Shown here: positions 19,141 to 34,260 of the stretch, one piece after another
Numbering within the stretch: the stretch's first letter is position 1
Layout of the letters: every line of letters starts with the position of its first letter
Assembly: GCA_964304625.1 (NCBI GenBank)
Contig: OZ199840.1
Span: forward strand, 9,284,882 to 9,348,881
DNA from: Kudoa neothunni
Taxonomy: Eukaryota > Animalia > Cnidaria
Reading direction: 5' to 3'
DNA length: 64,000 bases
The notes under the pieces: model-generated
Databases searched by the model: none
Told to the model about the DNA's origin: nothing
The model's input: only the letters and a program-made list of their open reading frames with translations
Program-made: the position numbers and the translations under genes

Positions 19141-21389
19141 TTATTGCATGTCTTTTGAATCTGACGAATTTCGATTTTGATTTTTTCGTTGGGGAGAATT
19201 TACAGTCGCTTTGCCAACCCTGACAGTGAGTTGAGGATTTCCAGATGAGTTCGACTGGGGTGACAATTGGGTTTCGAGGGGTAGATCGGATAAATCAAGA
19301 TAAGTTACATTATTATTGTTGTTGTTGTTGTTGTCGTTAGTGGTGTTTTGAATAGTATTAGTAGTAGTGTCAGTAATGATGGGGTTGGTGATAAAATCAC
19401 CGTCAGTGGTGGTGTTGCTCTCGTTGAGGGCGGAGAAAACGACATCAACCTCGGACTCACTGACTCTTACTTTTCGGTTTTCTCTCGAATCAGAGCTTTA
19501 AGAGAATTTAACTCTAAATGATAAAAGTCATAGGATTACCGGTGATTTCTCGATCTGTCTTGAGTAAGAAAACCTTTAGCGTAGGGATTGCGTTCGATCT
19601 TCAATCTAGTGATCTATTCATAATGGAAATATTATTGTAAAACAACCCGATATTACAACAAATACCAGCTTATTTTGGTAGGCCGTTACCGCAAAAAAAC
19701 AGGTTTGATCAAACGAGTTGTTATACACCACGCAGAAGATATTGCCGGGCATTTGAGCTGCCACAATCAATCGAAAATTGTAAAGATGCATCGACTTTAG
19801 GAGGAAATGGTTATCTCTGCAGGCTTGATGGTTGGTCAATTTGATGTATTTGAAGGTGAGAGTTCTTCCCTCTAGATACTCACCTACTTTGCCGGAATCA
19901 GGATGTTCAATGAAGTTGGTGGGTGTGTCGTAGACCTCATGTTTGCTTGGTGACCATCCTTTTCCCTCCATGTATTTCCATCGGATTGGATTGATCTGCT
20001 CGATGCCAACTTGAATCGAATATTTCATATGAGGAATAAGTCCAGTGACTCGCACCGCGAAGTAGGGAAATGTGCGTCGTCCGCACTTGGTGATGATCAT
20101 TTCATTGCCAACGTCGTAGAAAGCTTTCCAGCTGTTAGGGTCGACCAACTCCACATTGAAGTATGGTCCACAGTAGCTTTGTGGTATGTTGGAACCATGG
20201 TGCATTCCATGAAGGTGTTGTACGTTATTCGATTGGTCAATAAGGATGGCGTTAGTTGGCACACTATGTGATATGTATTCCATTGGTAGTGTTCTTGAAG
20301 TGCCATTTTCTTGAATGGGATTGACGTTTTGGGTTTGCATTTGTTGCTGGTCACAGATATAACCACCACTTTCCAATGACACAAACTTGTTATTCACTAG
20401 ATATTTCGATTACAAAAAACAAATACAAAAAATAATCAAATGAGCGTGTATAGTTGCATTGAAACTTTATTCTAGATTCACTAACGTAAACATTTAACCT
20501 GCCCATGAGAATAGTAGACCATTCATACACATTCCCCAGATAGATAGTCTCAACTTGTGAAAATTGATATTTTAATAATAAAAATTACTTGTTGGATTTG
20601 GAGGTTCTAATAAACGTTAAAAGTGCCTATCTATAATTGTATTTACCGTATGGAGGGCCAGCTAGAATGAATGTACCAACTGCTGGCTGTTGATTAGCCA
20701 TACCATTTGCTGGAGCAACTTGATGGTAGTTGGTACCATTCGGTAACACTGAGTGTACAACATTTTCAGATTTGGAGAGGTCGTGAGTGATATCGTTTGT
20801 GATGTACAGTTTGTCGAGGTTGGTTTCTAGATAGGGAGCATAATTCACACCCATCATTTGTGCAGGTATGTTCGTGCAGGAGAATGCATTGGGAGTGATT
20901 TCATTGTTACCGTTGCTGTTGTTGTTGTGATTGTGATTGTAATTGTTAGAGTTGTTGGTGCATAACAAATTTGTACTATTTTCAAGCAAATGAGCCCCAA
21001 TGTTCTCAAGAACATTTGATGGAGATGAATTAAATGTGTTCAGGGCATTATCTAGATTTAAATTTCTCGTAACACCGTTATTCTCAACTGAATTGCTGGT
21101 TAATGCTGAAGTTTGGGTGTTTGTCATGCTCATATAATTAGAGGCCATATTAAGAGAAATCAAATCAGAATTTCTCAGGTTGTTTGTTACAGATGGAGGG
21201 GACACTTTAGACTGGATATTTTTCGACAAATCTATGTAAAGATATTTATCGAATGTTCCTCACATACATACATCTAACCAACTTACTTTTTAGGTAGTGG
21301 GATGTATTTTGACCTCCATTTACTCCATTTTCTGAAGGTCTTCCATTGTTATTGATGCCATTTATGTTGTTATTGAAATTTTGCTCCAT
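19141..21389 (-). CDS. T-box transcription factor (divergent; Brachyury-like RWKY motif), ~7 exons
   Basis: Motifs WKAF..NEMIITKCGRRTFP, RWKY, HPDS, KLTN, LKSMHLY, FFAVTAYQN and ITRLKIERNPYAKGF. Asn-rich N-terminal exons (20627-21229 ORF) and a C-terminal exon ending TAA at 19141. Confidence 0.9.
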
Positions 21390-29000: not shown

Positions 29001-30697
29001 ATAAAAAAAGAATTTCCTCATTTCAGGAATTATAATATAAAGCGATTATCATTTTACTGTATACAACGAAAATTAATACATTTAAAAATTGATGCACATC
29101 TTGCATAATAATTCAACTGTTTCGTAGTATTCTTTGATTTGACCACTGACACAAGAAAGATTCGTTTTAATGAAATGCGTAATCATGAAGATGCTAGCTA
29201 AAAAACCTGTCAATATTTACACTATTATACTCAATTGCTAATTAGGTGACCTTAGGCACGTATATTTTAGACAATTCGCTATTAGCATATTTCACATGAG
29301 TAGATTCCGTAACACTGTCAACTAATCAAAAATCACCATGGATATTTTGTCTCTTAAACTGAACCTAAATTTAAGTTCTATAAAGTTTAAGCCCTCCGTG
29401 TGTCGATGAATCCACCCAAGAGCTATTGAGGCCAGTTCTTTCTTTTATTGGTAATATCAACAGCAGTTAAATCTGTTCTTCCTCAATCGCATCAAATTAA
29501 CCCACTTAAAAATTTCAGAACCAAATCCTTGCTCATACCATGTTTCAAATTTATCTCTTAGAAGAAGTATAAAAAATATCATGAGCAGTCACAATTTCTT
29601 CCTTCTTATTACAAACACAATCCACGTTTAAATTGTAGGAAGTTGAAAATATCGAAAAGTTGCAGTCTTTTCGATATTTTGGGGGGCAAGTGTCAAAACA
29701 TTGGATTATTTTAAATTTTTCCTTAACAGTTTTTCGCTGTCATCTGGACAATTTCAAAAAATCCACAAGTGTCTTCGAAAAATTCCAAACAAGTGCGAAA
29801 AATATTCAATGATGAGTTTTTTTTGTAGTTTTAAATTGTTTAAGCCAAATTTTAATATAATATGCTAACCCTTAATTCTTGACTTTAGAGTAAGTCTCAG
29901 AGTAAACCAAAACAAGAGGATGAAAAGTAGGATAATTCCGTGACCAATTTACTGTACTTAAATACACTTTAAATCACATCCGATAAGCATAAAGATGTCA
30001 TTCCGGAGGGAATTTAACAGAGGATAATTCATGTTCCAATAACAGGGTAGATTAATAAACGTGGACACTTTAAATATATGGGTGCTAAATTCCGTACCAA
30101 TTATTAGCATCTTAATGGCAAAATTTCAGTCATTTAAACAAAAACAACCTCTAAAGTATTTGATAAGAACCCGAAGCAACTCTTATAATATATGGATTGT
30201 TCTTATACAATTTCCCTCTGATTAAAATATTGAGAGTTTAATATTTTCACATTAGTCGTTTACTGACAAAACGTTTTCATTCTAACAGCCTCGAAAGAAG
30301 TTAAAGACGCCAGCATAAAGAGGTTCAGAATAAAAACACTAATTATGCAGGCTTAAACAGCAGATTAGTTTTATCAATGTTGGTGTGAACGAATTTATCT
30401 ACATGCAGTAGAGATAAAAAATAAGACATGAATAAACAAAACAACTATTATATCAAAATTCAATCAAAAATTTCAGCTTAACCGTCAGATTTTGATAAAT
30501 ATTCCACCCTCATTCTAATATGGTTATAATCCTCATTCCAACACAACAAAACGTCACCAACGTTATTTAAAGGTTAATCGCGTGATCCGACATAATCTGG
30601 TAAAGTGTTTTGTTAGCATGGATAGTAATTTAAATTGTCGAAAATTACCAATAACTATTCGAATCCAGAGCTTGTCACTCGATTCGCAGGAATTCCA

Positions 30698-32357
30698 ATG
30701 TTTTCCCACACCATAAAGCACCACACTCGCTCAATGTTATCCACCAGTAGAAGGAACATTCACGGCAATAATTCAGCACCATTGAAAGTGCTTGTTTCAG
30801 GAGCAGCTGGTCAAATTGGATCATACATTTTGCAGTTGATTGCATGTGGTCGTCTAGCTGGAGAGAGGGTAATAATGGGATTGGTTATTCAATAAATATG
30901 TCAAAATTAAAAATAATTATTTCTGTGTTTTAAATATTGGAATACTTTTTGAATTTAGAGAGTTGAAATAAATATGCTTGATATTGGTGGGGTTGAAAAG
31001 ATAATGCATGGAATTCGTATGGAGATTGAAGATTGTTGTCATCCTTCATTCTACAAAGTGAATGTGTTCACCAAATCGGACGAAGCACTCAAAGATATTG
31101 ATTGTGCCATTTTGCTGGCCAACAAAATGGTCCTCACTGATGATATTAAACGCATCGATCTGTTGTCAGCGAACAAGGATCTTTACACTGAAATTGGGGA
31201 GCAATTCCAAAAATATGCGAAACCGGATGCACTAGTACGTTTCTTTATTCTGCAGCCAGCCTACATTGGAATGTCTTAATAACATCAGGATTTCTGTCGA
31301 TTGTTAGTTGTGCTAAATGTAATTCTTCAGTGGAATATTCATTCCATTGAATTAACAAATTTGCCCCAACACTAAGGCTGCATGTTCCAGTTTGAGAATC
31401 ATGCCTCATTGCTTTATAGGCACTCGTGGTGGCAAATCCATGCAATACGAACTGTTTGGTGATGATGAAAAGTGCGCCTAAACGCAATCCGAAGTCGTTC
31501 TCATCCCTTAGCCGTCTCGATCACAATCGCCTGACAGCCCTCGTTGCTGCAAAACTTCATACATCCAATGGTTTGGTTCGAAAGTGCATTGTTTGGGGCA
31601 ATCATTCTAACTCAATGCATCCTGATTTGAGATTCGCAGAGTTTTAAAATGTCAGATCGCCCTAGCTCGCCTTATGAGAAGGTGACCAACGCGATCAGCG
31701 ACTACAAATGGATCACCGAAACAATGCCCTGGGTAGGTGATTATTTTTCGTTATTTTCTGTGCATTACACAAAATGCTGATTGTTTAATATATTTTATAG
31801 TTGTTCGACATTTTTTTAATTGATATTTGAAAACTTTCAATCAGATCGACTATTTGTCCATTTGATTGTTTACAATCGGCTCACCACTTAATATTTGTAA
31901 CCAGCCGGCGTTGTCACTGCTGTTGTTGAATCGAATATGATTGATCTAATTTTGTGTAGGAATTGAAAGATCGAGTGAATGCAATTATCAGAAATCGGGG
32001 CAGATCTAGTGCACTCTCGGCGGGAAATGCCGCTGTCGATCATATGAGCGATTGGTTGAGAGGAACCAAAGATGTAAGCCGTTAATGTCTTGTGTCTCAT
32101 TCAGTCATTTTTAACTAATTTTGATACAGGGAGATTGGGTATCTATGGGTGTGTATTCGGATGGCACCAAGTATGGTATTCCTGCTGGTATCTTCTATGC
32201 CATGCCTGTGGTTTGTCACGACGGCAAATACTCAGTAGTAGAAGACTTGCCAATAGATAAAAATACCCAGGAAAAAATGATGATTTCTGCGGAGGAGTTG
32301 TTAGAGGAGAAAAAATTGGCGGGAAATAAATTAATTTCTATCACTCATATTTATTAA
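30698..32357 (+). CDS. MDH1: MDH1 (cytosolic-type) malate/lactate dehydrogenase family protein with N-terminal presequence and altered substrate loop, ~5 exons
   Basis: Motifs [65 protein letters not shown] and [14 protein letters not shown]. Exons ~30698-30868, 30959-31234, ~31420-31732, ~31960-32073, ~32130-32357. One extra T at ~31643. Confidence 0.92.
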
Positions 32358-34260
32358 TATTATCTTGTTTTTGTGGATCCTATTTGATTGAATGAGAGGA
32401 TAATCTCGTATTGTTATGTTTTGAAAAAAGTTAGCGGGGTCTTCCTGCGTTGTGTTGCATGGAAACCACAAAATGTGATAGGATTGTGGGACAATAATAT
32501 ATGAGTTAATTTGTTTCGTGGAAAAAGATATAGTGGGTGATGTGTAATTCCTTTGGAGGTGGGGAAAAAGTACGCATTACTTACCCAGAATTGAGGGTTT
32601 AATTCGCGCGTGCGTATATTCAAAATTCGATTATCATTAAATATTTTATTTCAGGAAACCTTGATTATTTTTATTTGTTTCTTGCACTCTACATATACAG
32701 TCGATCACCGTTTATCCGAAAATGTTTGGGACCTCGCATTTTTCTTTCGGATACTAAAATTTTTGTTAAACAAAGTTCGGCGCACGCGCATGTGGGAAAT
32801 TGTAGGTTGTTCGCACACTTTATTTGTCATTATTCAATGTTTATTTTATATTTTTAAACAAAACTCTACTGTATATAAGTTACACTAGTGAATACAATGT
32901 GAAACACATTAGTTTAAAGCACAGTAATTCTAGATCCAATGTAATGGACGCATGCGTAGTATAGATATGTGCGACCTTAACGCCGCTGCACCACATTAGT
33001 AATAGAATGATACATTCTAGATTCTAAAAAAATGAACATTTATTATTGTCATTAATTTTTCATAAATTTTTTATAATTTACTCTCAATATGGATATTGTG
33101 AGCTGTACTAATAATGATGGTAAAAATAATTAAATTAACAATGAGGAGTATTTTCCCAGAATTCTCCATAAAGATATTTAGAATTTCCTCATTAATTAAA
33201 ATATGACATATTTTTATTAATTAATTAATTAATTTTGATTAATGATTGTTAAAACTCAATAAGACTTAAAAATGGAAGTGTTATGGAAAAAAACTGTTGT
33301 GAGAATATTGTTTAATTCAATATAATTCAGTGGATAAGTTGGTCTTATGAAGTCACTGATAGTTTGTGATTAAGCCATCCAATAAATTCCATTTTTTATA
33401 TTTTATTTTATATTTATTTTATTTTATATTTCATTTTATTACTCATGAAAAGATAAGATATAAGGGAGTTAGTCTTTAGCCAACATTAATTCGTTCATCA
33501 TGAACATAGTTGTATTTTGAAAATAAAATACTATATTATCCACAATATGATATTTCTATTAATCAAACATAACTTAAATTGAATAAATAACGAATATATG
33601 TATCAAGAAAAAAAATGTAGGTATCATTTTGAGCAGGCATTAATCTAGACTTCAAGACATTTTTATCCGAAAATTCAAAAAAAAAGTTGTTTCGGATTGT
33701 GATATCTTTTCAAGATTTCGAATAATTCTAATACTCTCTATTACTAAAACAATAAATATGATTATTTTACCTAATTCAAAAACTTATTAATAATAAAATG
33801 ATTTAACAGAACTCAATAATCTACACGGTTTTTAGATAAACAAAAAACCCAATGTCAATAGAAAAATCTCAGAATCTTGGGGAAAACCCCAACGTTTAAA
33901 AGACTCGTAACAGGTATGTTGTACGCGTGCGCTGACCAATTCTATATTAGGAACATTCAAAGTTGATGACGTCTTGTCAAATAGTGTAATTTATTGTCGC
34001 GGTGAATTCGTGATTTATGGTCAGACTACATATTGTAAGGGATTATAATTGGTTAAGTAATTATCCAAGAACACTGTACTACGAATTCTTCCAGCGTGAT
34101 ATATCCGACTTATTTTAATCAACAAAAATTAAACTATAATACAGAAAAGCAGTATGAAATAATTCTCCGAACAAATGTTAGAATCCTTAGAGTTGTGCAA
34201 AGCACGAAAACAATTCGCCCAATGTCGTGGGTTATCGTGTCACGCTTGTAGGCGAGTGCA

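What the first reader, a model, noticed from the sequence alone, without database searches (positions are those of the whole stretch)
31100..31165. MDH1-type enzyme has lost its oxaloacetate-specificity Arg (Arg to Leu): candidate convergent MDH-to-LDH/2-hydroxyacid dehydrogenase
Seen: the mobile loop reads [25 protein letters not shown] where MDH1 has [24 protein letters not shown]. M-P-R becomes M-V-L (Leu codon 31133-31135) with a 1-residue insertion, and no alignment puts an Arg at the specificity site. The second loop Arg, NP.NTN, LDHNR, catalytic His (WGNHS) and the NAD-selecting Asp are intact, so the enzyme looks active. The QQRGAAV pocket segment reads KDRVNAI (Gly to Val). Known: Trichomonas LDH arose from cytosolic MDH with Leu at this Arg91 site, and trypanosomatid aromatic 2-hydroxyacid dehydrogenase also lost this Arg. 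Inference: an independent neofunctionalisation of MDH1 in an animal lineage.
Basis: partly seen in the sequence, partly recalled or inferred. Interest (0 to 1): 0.82.

Follow-up and report, generated by a model that had tools for sequence, protein, structure and literature searches.

The report
MDH1-derived dehydrogenase lacking specificity arginine
An animal with a tiny 40-Mb genome and no ordinary lactate dehydrogenase carries two conserved copies of a cytosolic-type malate dehydrogenase, one in this window, in which leucine replaces the arginine that recognises oxaloacetate, so they probably act on pyruvate-like acids, though no assay has tested this.

Summary
Window 31100-31165 encodes [22 protein letters not shown], and Leu (31133-31135) sits where MDHs have the specificity Arg (LDH numbering 102). 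It aligns with Leu91 of Trichomonas LDH.

The suspected frameshift is an assembly error. An independent contig of the same species lacks one T at 31642 and one A at 32324. Both changes restore frame and homology.

The gene has six coding exons, all with GT-AG introns. An orthologue in another species keeps the loop and every splice site that its 998-base contig covers, with dN/dS of 0.046. The catalytic and NAD-binding residues are intact.

The Arg-to-Leu change is not private to this gene. It defines a clade that shares a one-residue insertion, Gln-to-Met after the catalytic His, and Gly-to-Ala/Val in the pocket. The clade has two old subtypes. Type A is an intact intronless gene elsewhere in this genome. 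Type B is this gene, which carries a presequence-like N-terminus.

The genome also has canonical MDH1 and MDH2 but no canonical L-LDH.

The substrate is unknown and no RNA evidence was available. An AU test did not reject a common origin with trichomonad-type LDHs, so "convergent" stays unproven.

Verdict: a real, functional, non-MDH paralogue and a plausible animal case of MDH-derived LDH. Interest is moderate to high.

The parts
30618..30624 (+). Proposed first coding mini-exon ATGGATA (Met-Asp plus 1 nt), followed by a 44-nt GT-AG intron (30625-30668)
   Evidence: The orthologue contig L015 has ATGGAAA followed by gtaag and a 46-nt intron. Only this start gives an AUG-initiated open frame in both species, because the window's Met codons at 30698 and 30734 read Leu and Val in L015. 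This is an inference with no RNA support.
30669..30868 (+). Exon 1: a presequence-like extension (…[38 protein letters not shown]) followed by the NAD-binding start [13 protein letters not shown]
   Evidence: The extension is rich in Arg, Lys, His, Ser and Thr, has one acidic residue, and is conserved in kind in L015. Ldh_1_N matches from window 30785. Type A has no such extension.
30959..31234 (+). Exon 2: NAD-selecting Asp (MLDI) and the mobile specificity loop [18 protein letters not shown]
   Evidence: PF00056. The orthologue P0121 is 89% identical.
31133..31135 (+). Leu codon (CTC) at the specificity position (Arg102 in LDH numbering; Arg91/92 of cytosolic MDH)
   Evidence: Aligns with Leu91 of T. 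vaginalis LDH and with Arg of human MDH1. Conserved in P0121, L001, P0001, P0122, P0123 and P0124.
31420..31732 (+). Exon 3: NPCNTN, LDHNR (Asp168, Arg171), and WGNHSNSM (catalytic His, with Gln replaced by Met). It contains one spurious extra T in the run 31642-31645
   Evidence: With TTT the frame reads ...[13 protein letters not shown]... without a stop.
31642..31645 (+). T4 homopolymer where the assembly has one base too many, producing a false TAA and frameshift
   Evidence: The X1 contig (depth 6.7, 0 substitutions over 2001 bases) leaves out one base at 31642. Homologues run straight through this point.
31960..32073 (+). Exon 4: pocket helix [22 protein letters not shown] (Gly replaced by Val at the position of LDH Ala236)
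   Evidence: P0124 shares R-V-x-A-I-I.
32130..32334 (+). Exon 5 to the corrected stop codon. There is a spurious extra A in 32324-32326. The corrected C-terminus is ...EEKKLAGIN*
   Evidence: The corrected end matches the length of type A (…EEKKLALA*) and P0001 (…EEKKMAFE*). This exon is 70% identical to type A but only 46% identical to P0124.

Best explanation
The window holds an intact, expressed-type gene of six coding exons, about 370 codons once two homopolymer errors are corrected. It encodes an NAD-dependent L-2-hydroxyacid dehydrogenase descended from cytosolic-type malate dehydrogenase. It keeps the full hydride-transfer machinery: catalytic His-Asp pair, Arg171 for the substrate's C1 carboxylate, loop Arg109, and the Rossmann motif with its NAD-selecting Asp. 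[quoted passage not shown] A Leu stands there, and a Val replaces the pocket Gly. The pocket is therefore uncharged, hydrophobic and tighter, so oxaloacetate should be a poor substrate and small monocarboxylic 2-oxo acids (pyruvate first) the likely ones.

The change is old. It defines a clade with two subtypes. Type A in this genome is intronless, has no N-terminal extension and is probably cytosolic. Type B is this gene, with a roughly 40-residue basic, hydroxylated presequence-like extension, so it is possibly mitochondrial. Because the genome has canonical MDH1 and MDH2 but no canonical L-LDH, the clade most likely supplies the pyruvate/lactate (or related) redox step.

Shown: sequence, intactness, conservation, clade membership, and absence of canonical LDH. 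Inferred: loss of MDH activity, the substrate, the location, and the first mini-exon.
For: - Loop and catalytic residues are read directly from the sequence.
- The Leu aligns with Leu91 of TvLDH 4uum and with Arg of human MDH1 7rm9.
- The frameshift and the odd C-terminus disappear in the independent X1 contig.
- The orthologue P0121/L015 has an identical loop core, conserves all four splice sites it covers, and gives dN/dS 0.046 over 147 codons at dS of about 1.2.
- Clade signature: +1 residue, Leu102, Gln to Met, Gly to Ala/Val. It is present in L001, P0001, P0122, P0123, P0124 and this gene.
- The clade has SH-aLRT 98, and 95 with the loop columns removed.
- The whole genome has only four Ldh_1_N/Ldh_1_C loci: MDH2, canonical MDH1 with PRK, type A, and type B.
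- TIGR01771 (L-LDH) finds nothing above its cut-off.
- The presequence-like extension is conserved in kind in L015.
Against: - There is no biochemical data.
- There is no RNA evidence. The two RNA runs tried held no reads of this organism.
- In other MDHs, replacing Arg102 alone gave weak pyruvate activity (PMC4109310), so Leu102 alone does not make an LDH.
- The type B loop has also lost the usual Gly-Met (it reads D-D-I), which could lower catalytic rate.
- The first mini-exon and the targeting function are inferred from two sequences only.
- The X1 contig may come from the same sample as the assembly, so it is independent in technology but perhaps not in individual.
Confidence: 0.65

Rival explanations
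1. It is a dehydrogenase for bulkier 2-oxo acids (aromatic or branched-chain), like the Trypanosoma cruzi aromatic 2-hydroxyacid dehydrogenase that also descends from cytosolic MDH. It would not be a lactate dehydrogenase.
For: T. cruzi has an MDH-like protein, annotated as cytoplasmic MDH, with no MDH activity and aromatic hydroxyacid activity (PMC11461325). Two diverged subtypes in one genome suggest different substrates. The type B loop is very different from that of type A.
Against: Gly to Val, and Leu at position 102, fill the pocket rather than enlarge it. That is an inference from homology with LDH Ala236 and Gln102, and no structure was examined. The genome lacks any other L-LDH.
Confidence: 0.15
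2. It is a catalytically weak or inactive paralogue kept for a non-enzymatic role (a pseudoenzyme), comparable to MDH1B, which is built into axonemal complexes.
For: The loop motif E-G-M has degenerated to D-D-I. MDH1 and MDH1B appear as chains of large assemblies in PDB entries 9fqr and 9d2f. Strong purifying selection alone does not prove catalysis.
Against: Every catalytic and cofactor residue is kept in both this gene and P0124, even though exon-wise identity between them is only about 42-57%. Pseudoenzymes usually lose some of these residues.
Confidence: 0.08
3. It is still a malate dehydrogenase, with another basic residue (for example the Lys of A-N-K-M) compensating for the lost Arg.
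For: A Lys lies three residues before the Leu in this gene. The protein scores best against MDH family models.
Against: That Lys is absent from P0124 and from all type A members. The genome already has canonical MDH1 and MDH2. The literature states that all known MDHs have Arg102 (PMC4109310). Clade members fail the MDH_euk_cyt equivalog cut-off.
Confidence: 0.07
4. It is a decaying pseudogene. The stop at 31645 and the odd C-terminus would be real lesions.
For: The window sequence as assembled has an in-frame TAA and a +1 shift.
Against: The X1 contig removes both lesions with single-base homopolymer changes. dN/dS is 0.046 against an orthologue with saturated synonymous sites, and the splice sites are conserved.
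Confidence: 0.04

Closest known systems
Trichomonas vaginalis L-lactate dehydrogenase (PDB 4uum/4uun/5a1t; NCBIfam TIGR01756 LDH_protist)
   Same: It descends from cytosolic-type MDH, has Leu at the specificity position (aligned residue for residue), and its host lineage lacks a canonical LDH (PMC4109310). It was the best PDB match of exon 2.
   Different: TvLDH has no one-residue insertion before the loop. This clade scores only 240-259 bits on TIGR01756 (cut-off 486), whereas trichomonad-like representatives score 320-436. The host here is an animal, and there are two old subtypes, one with a presequence-like extension. Common ancestry with the trichomonad-like group is neither shown nor rejected (AU p 0.645).
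Cytosolic malate dehydrogenase MDH1 (human 7rm9, pig 4mdh/5mdh; TIGR01758 MDH_euk_cyt)
   Same: It shares the fold family (PF00056 + PF02866), length, catalytic residues and NAD preference. Type A is about 50% identical to vertebrate MDH1 (E 1e-98 against PDB).
   Different: Arg92 is Leu and Arg93 is Thr (Lys in type A). There is a +1 residue. Gly is replaced by Val or Ala in QQRGAAV, and Gln by Met after the catalytic His. Clade members fall below the equivalog cut-off (346-420 against 470.4; frog control 545). The genome has a separate canonical MDH1.
Trypanosoma cruzi aromatic 2-hydroxyacid dehydrogenase (AHADH)
   Same: It is a member of the cytosolic-MDH group that has no MDH activity (PMC11461325).
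   Different: No AHADH sequence was available here for comparison. The pocket substitutions in this gene point to a smaller rather than a larger substrate (inference).
Apicomplexan LDHs (Plasmodium, Cryptosporidium)
   Same: They are LDHs that arose from MDHs by changes in the specificity loop, including an insertion (PMC4109310).
   Different: They derive from alpha-proteobacterial 'LDH-like' MDH rather than from cytosolic-type MDH. In Plasmodium-type LDHs a six-residue insertion moves the specificity role to Trp107f; Cryptosporidium LDH has Gly at position 102. Here the insertion is a single residue upstream and the Leu stays at position 102.

Membership tests
LDH/MDH superfamily (Pfam PF00056 Ldh_1_N + PF02866 Ldh_1_C) | Both domains match above the gathering score | tested here: met
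   Exon 2 scores 29.3 bits on PF00056 (cut-off 27). Exons 3, 4 and 5 score 27.5, 22.8 and 47.8 bits on PF02866 (cut-off 22.6). The genome-wide scans hit the same exons.
LDH/MDH superfamily | Catalytic His195-Asp168 pair, Arg171, loop Arg109, GxxGxxG and the NAD-selecting Asp | tested here: met
   WGNHS, LDHNR, IKR, GAAGQIG and MLDI are read and aligned.
MalateDH-SF1 subfamily (TIGR01759; cytosolic-type and Thermus-type MDH) | Whole-protein score above 345.65 bits | tested here: inconclusive
   Full-length clade members pass (L001 423, P0001 426, P0123 404, P0122 378, P0124 376). The window gene could only be scored exon by exon. TIGR01759 is the best family for exons 2 and 3 and second for exon 5. 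The joined model was not scored.
Eukaryotic cytosolic malate dehydrogenase (TIGR01758 MDH_euk_cyt, equivalog) | Score above 470.4 bits | tested here: not met
   L001 420, P0001 412, P0123 366, P0122 364, P0124 346. The frog MDH1 control scores 545.
Malate dehydrogenase (any class) | Arg at the specificity position 102, which binds the C4 carboxylate of oxaloacetate | tested here: not met
   Leu stands at that position in this gene and in all clade members. PMC4109310 states that all known MDHs have Arg102.
Protist (trichomonad) LDH (TIGR01756 LDH_protist, equivalog) | Score above 486.25 bits | tested here: not met
   Clade members score 240-259 bits. Trichomonad-like representatives score 320-436 bits.
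Protist (trichomonad) LDH | Leu at position 102 in a cytosolic-MDH scaffold | tested here: met
   alignment to 4uum. This feature describes how the enzyme works and is not proof of membership.
Canonical L-lactate dehydrogenase (TIGR01771; Gln102) | Score above 303.55 bits, and Gln at position 102 | tested here: not met
   L001 scores 75 bits and P0124 44 bits. Nothing in the whole genome exceeds the cut-off. The residue at 102 is Leu.
Lactate dehydrogenase activity (functional class) | kcat/Km for pyruvate far above that for oxaloacetate | not testable with these tools
   This needs the recombinant enzyme.
Mitochondrially targeted protein | Cleavable N-terminal amphipathic, basic presequence, and import | tested here: inconclusive
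   The roughly 40-residue extension has 4 Arg, 2 Lys, 4 His, 9 Ser/Thr and 1 Asp. The L015 orthologue has a similar composition. No predictor or experiment was available.

The most novel reading that the evidence does not exclude
This would be a further origin (or spread) of lactate dehydrogenase from cytosolic malate dehydrogenase and the first in animals. In this reading, a small-genome metazoan lineage lost the canonical Gln102 LDH and replaced it with a Leu102 MDH1 paralogue, which then split into a cytosolic form (type A) and a presequence-bearing, possibly mitochondrial form (type B, this gene).
Probability: 0.3. Interest if true: 0.8.

Novelty: new variant of a known kind. Interest (0 to 1): 0.6.

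Why it matters
The LDH/MDH pair is a textbook model of how enzyme specificity evolves. The literature read here counts only four MDH-to-LDH shifts outside the canonical LDH clade (Plasmodium, Cryptosporidium, Trichomonas, Selenomonas; PMC10583557), and none is in animals.

This case is a metazoan clade that lacks the canonical LDH. It shows the same Arg-to-Leu solution as trichomonads, plus its own insertion and two co-varying pocket changes, and it has two diverged isoforms. That gives a fresh natural replicate for testing how repeatable and how epistatic this switch is. It also raises the question of how this animal balances glycolytic NADH.

There is a practical point too. The result shows that frameshifts in this assembly can be homopolymer errors.

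Tried and rejected
- **Pseudogene reading.** Rejected after read laying and dN/dS.
- **RNA evidence.** The two metatranscriptomic runs and one WGS run carrying the same species label held no reads of this stretch. This is not a test of expression.
- **Organism identification.** All attempts failed:
  - The nematode SL1 is absent.
  - HSC70 is at most 78% identical to any named animal.
  - The mitochondrial contig (18.2 kb, 44% GC, very divergent COX1) was uninformative.
  - Only 'an animal' can be said, from the T-box gene and animal-type HSC70.
- **More orthologues in JGI metagenomes.** A DNA pattern search and a peptide scan were both empty.
- **ESM Atlas look-up of P0124.** It returned only generic MDH clusters.
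- **Cluster look-up.** It gave no names for the clade members.
- **Octopine dehydrogenase family scan.** No hit, but the control genomes did not ring either, so it is uninformative.
- **Steindel et al. 2016 (PMC4918429).** The paper is not held in the library.
- **Proof of independence from trichomonad-type LDH.** The AU test was inconclusive.
- **Structure prediction.** Not run. The tools return no coordinates, so pocket geometry could not have been measured.
- **Joined spliced model.** Exons were searched and placed in trees separately, by reference.

Full report
**1. What is in the sequence**

The + strand between 30618 and 32334 carries a split gene of the lactate/malate dehydrogenase family. 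Every intron has GT-AG ends. The exons I settled on are:
- 30618-30624, a proposed 7-nt first coding exon
- 30669-30868
- 30959-31234
- 31420-31732
- 31960-32073
- 32130-32334

Pfam places exon 2 in Ldh_1_N and exons 3-5 in Ldh_1_C, all above the gathering scores. The whole-genome scans hit the same exons.

Window 31100-31165 encodes [22 protein letters not shown], and CTC at 31133-31135 encodes the Leu.

**2. Register of the Leu**

HMMER aligns exon 2 best to Trichomonas vaginalis L-LDH (4uum). The window's M-V-L lies over the 4uum M-P-L. The L91R mutant (4uul) and human MDH1 (7rm9) show Arg at that column. The window protein has one extra residue upstream.

MAFFT with 39 full-length relatives gives the same register. 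It is anchored by the conserved (E/D)-x-(M/I)-x-Arg109 to the right of the Leu. So no reasonable alignment puts an Arg at position 102.

**3. The 'frameshift'**

As assembled, exon 3 has a TAA at 31645-31647 and continues in the +1 frame. A Logan contig of run X1 has the same species label and word depth 6.7. It covers 30500-32500 with no substitutions and exactly two differences:
- One base fewer in the T4 run at 31642-31645.
- One base fewer in the A3 run at 32324-32326.

The first change yields ...[13 protein letters not shown]... in a single frame. The second moves the stop so that the protein ends ...EEKKLAGIN. That matches the length of its relatives (...EEKKLALA...EEKKMAFE).

Two out of two differences restore frame and homology, which points to homopolymer errors in the assembly. 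One caveat applies: X1 may be from the same sample as the assembly. The RNA runs X10 and X11 and the DNA run X8 contained no reads of this stretch, so expression remains untested.

**4. Is the gene maintained?**

A word search with exon 2 found one protein, P0121, at 89% identity, on two ENA metagenome contigs (L015 and L016). Its loop reads [18 protein letters not shown].

L015 spans the 5' region through the start of exon 3. Its introns are unalignable, but all four splice sites it covers are conserved. Over 147 aligned codons, pS is 0.60 (dS about 1.2), dN is 0.054 and dN/dS is 0.046. That indicates strong purifying selection.

Upstream, protein-level similarity continues past the window's first in-frame Met codon (…[11 protein letters not shown]… against …SRLVGVPLLTH…). 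That Met codon and the next one are Leu and Val in L015. Both species, however, have ATGGA(T/A)A followed by a GT donor, and a 44- or 46-nt intron that joins it in frame.

I therefore propose a 7-nt first coding exon and an N-terminal extension of about 40 residues. The extension is rich in Arg, Lys, His, Ser and Thr, with one acidic residue in this species and two in L015. This step is inference.

**5. The change is not private to this gene**

The genome is 40.26 Mb: three chromosome-sized contigs plus an 18.2-kb mitochondrial contig. It has only four Ldh_1_N/Ldh_1_C loci:
- A mitochondrial-type MDH2 (C3:822 kb; IAAGIPRKPG).
- A canonical MDH1 (C1:14.78 Mb; GAAPRKAGMDRADLL, WGNHSGTQYPD, KRGEAII).
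- An intronless, intact 334-codon gene (C2:9.64 Mb, L001) whose loop reads LVAGALNLKEGMKRSDLL.
- The window gene.

L001 therefore also has the one-residue insertion and the Leu. Its orthologue P0001 (74% identity, run SRR31175926) reads LVAGAMALKEGMKRSDLL.

I searched 1.84 billion cluster representatives with L001. The three best hits are P0122 and P0124, both from run ERR9890981, and P0123 from SRR33006160. All three have the insertion and the Leu.

All members also share two further changes:
- Gln to Met four residues after the catalytic His (GNHxx(S/T)M).
- Gly to Ala or Val in the pocket helix (R-G-A-A becomes R-A/V-x-x). By my own alignment knowledge, this is the position of Ala236 in canonical LDH.

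**6. Two subtypes**

In an ML tree the insertion/Leu group is one clade, with SH-aLRT 98 and 95 when the loop columns are removed.

Exons 2 and 3 of the window gene, placed as separate fragments, fall with P0124 (SH-aLRT 96). They share with it IMHG-RME-EDC, VFT, DC--LAN-M-L, DLRF-E, W-TET and R-V-x-A-I-I. I call this subtype B.

L001 and P0001 form subtype A; P0122, from the same run as P0124, has the same A-G-A-x-x-L loop, but the tree left it and P0123 unresolved within the clade. Because P0122 and P0124 come from one run, both loop forms seem to coexist in a second, distant organism.

Exon 5 of the window gene instead groups with type A of its own lineage. It is 70% identical to L001 and 46% identical to P0124 (SH-aLRT 90). 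This suggests an old 3' gene conversion, and I leave it unexplained. The fragments do not overlap each other, so their apparent grouping with one another in the tree carries no meaning.

**7. Family membership**

Full-length clade members give these NCBIfam results:
- They pass the subfamily model TIGR01759 (376-426 bits; cut-off 345.65).
- They fail the cytosolic-MDH equivalog TIGR01758 (346-420 bits; cut-off 470.4; frog MDH1 control 545).
- They fail the protist-LDH equivalog TIGR01756 (240-259 bits; cut-off 486).
- They fail canonical L-LDH TIGR01771.

Other Leu-bearing representatives without the insertion (P0153, P0219, P0182, P0248) score 320-436 bits on the protist-LDH model and form their own clade.

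However, an AU test does not reject a tree that unites that group with this clade (p 0.645). The one-residue insertion, the model scores and the animal host argue for a separate event. The tree alone cannot exclude a shared origin or a transfer.

**8. No canonical LDH**

Neither Pfam domain nor TIGR01771 finds any further locus in this chromosome-level assembly. The best TIGR01771 score is 74.8 bits, on type A, against a cut-off of 303.55, and the control genomes rang. An octopine-dehydrogenase scan was empty, but its controls were silent too, so it is uninformative.

**9. Host**

The window holds a T-box gene. The genome's HSC70 is animal-type but at most 78% identical to any named sequence. 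I could not identify the organism further.

**10. Mechanism**

[quoted passage not shown] Gln (canonical LDH), Leu (trichomonads), Gly (Cryptosporidium) or a displaced Trp (Plasmodium) packs against the methyl group of pyruvate (PMC4109310). The catalytic set is intact here and in P0124, despite exon-wise identity of only 42-57% between them. I therefore expect an active NADH-dependent 2-oxoacid reductase that has given up oxaloacetate.

Leu102 together with Val (Ala in type A) at the pocket Gly makes the site hydrophobic and smaller. That favours pyruvate-sized substrates. Type A, with Ala as in canonical LDH and an E-G-M-x-R loop, looks the more LDH-like of the two. Type B has a more altered loop (D-D-I-K-R) and a presequence-like extension, and it may work in mitochondria or on a related substrate. 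The same paper warns that single Arg102 replacements give poor LDHs, so these predictions need an assay.

**11. Novelty**

The papers read here list MDH-to-LDH shifts only in Plasmodium, Cryptosporidium, Trichomonas and Selenomonas (PMC10583557; PMC4109310), plus an MDH-derived aromatic hydroxyacid dehydrogenase in T. cruzi (PMC11461325). I found no report of such a clade in animals. My search was limited and the organism is unidentified.

I rate this a new variant of a known kind.

**12. Procedure note**

The spliced protein was never joined and never sent to a search tool. Exons were used one by one, by reference.

Noticed in passing
window 31642-31645 and 32324-32326: The assembly differs from a contig of run X1 by single-base homopolymer length errors, two in 2 kb and both inside this coding sequence. 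Other 'frameshifts' or 'pseudogenes' noted in this genome may be the same artefact.
   Followed up: partly
G000:C2:9637930-9638934 (L001:1498-2502, minus strand): An intronless, intact 334-codon MDH1-like gene (type A) also has the one-residue insertion and Leu at the specificity site (LVAGALNLKEGMKRSDLL). It has Ala at the pocket Gly and no N-terminal extension. It is the more LDH-like of the two copies.
   Followed up: partly
window 32130-32321 (exon 5): Mosaic ancestry. Exon 5 is 70% identical to type A of the same genome but 46% identical to the type B relative P0124, while exons 2-4 are closest to P0124. This may be an old 3' gene conversion between the paralogues.
   Followed up: partly
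window 30578-30628; L015 68-119: A short block upstream of the proposed start codon (TCGCGTGATCC … CATGGA(T/A)AGTAA) is conserved between two species whose introns are unalignable. It may be a core promoter or 5'UTR element together with the 7-nt first coding exon.
   Followed up: partly
alignment of cytosolic-type MDH representatives: Gln to Met four residues after the catalytic His (GNHxxTQ becomes GNHxx(S/T)M) recurs in several separate groups that have lost Arg102 (this clade, P0182, P0219, P0172, P0179). It also occurs in one Arg-bearing sequence (P0125). It may be a co-adaptive change.
   Followed up: no
window 19621-20397 (-): An open frame with a T-box DNA-binding domain (131 bits). 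A second 200-codon open frame lies just upstream of it (20630-21229) and has no Pfam match.
   Followed up: no
G000:C4 (18,219 bases; L020 + L021): A presumed mitochondrial genome with 44% G+C against about 31% in the nuclear window. It has a very divergent COX1 that uses TGA as Trp, and ARAGORN found only 14 tRNA-like calls, mostly doubtful.
   Followed up: partly
G000:C1:5121614-5123425, C2:624257-626074, C1:2234013-2235785, C3:6617350-6619341: All four HSP70-family genes match in single uninterrupted open frames (662-820 codons) without internal stops, like the type A dehydrogenase, in a genome where the window gene has five introns.
   Followed up: no
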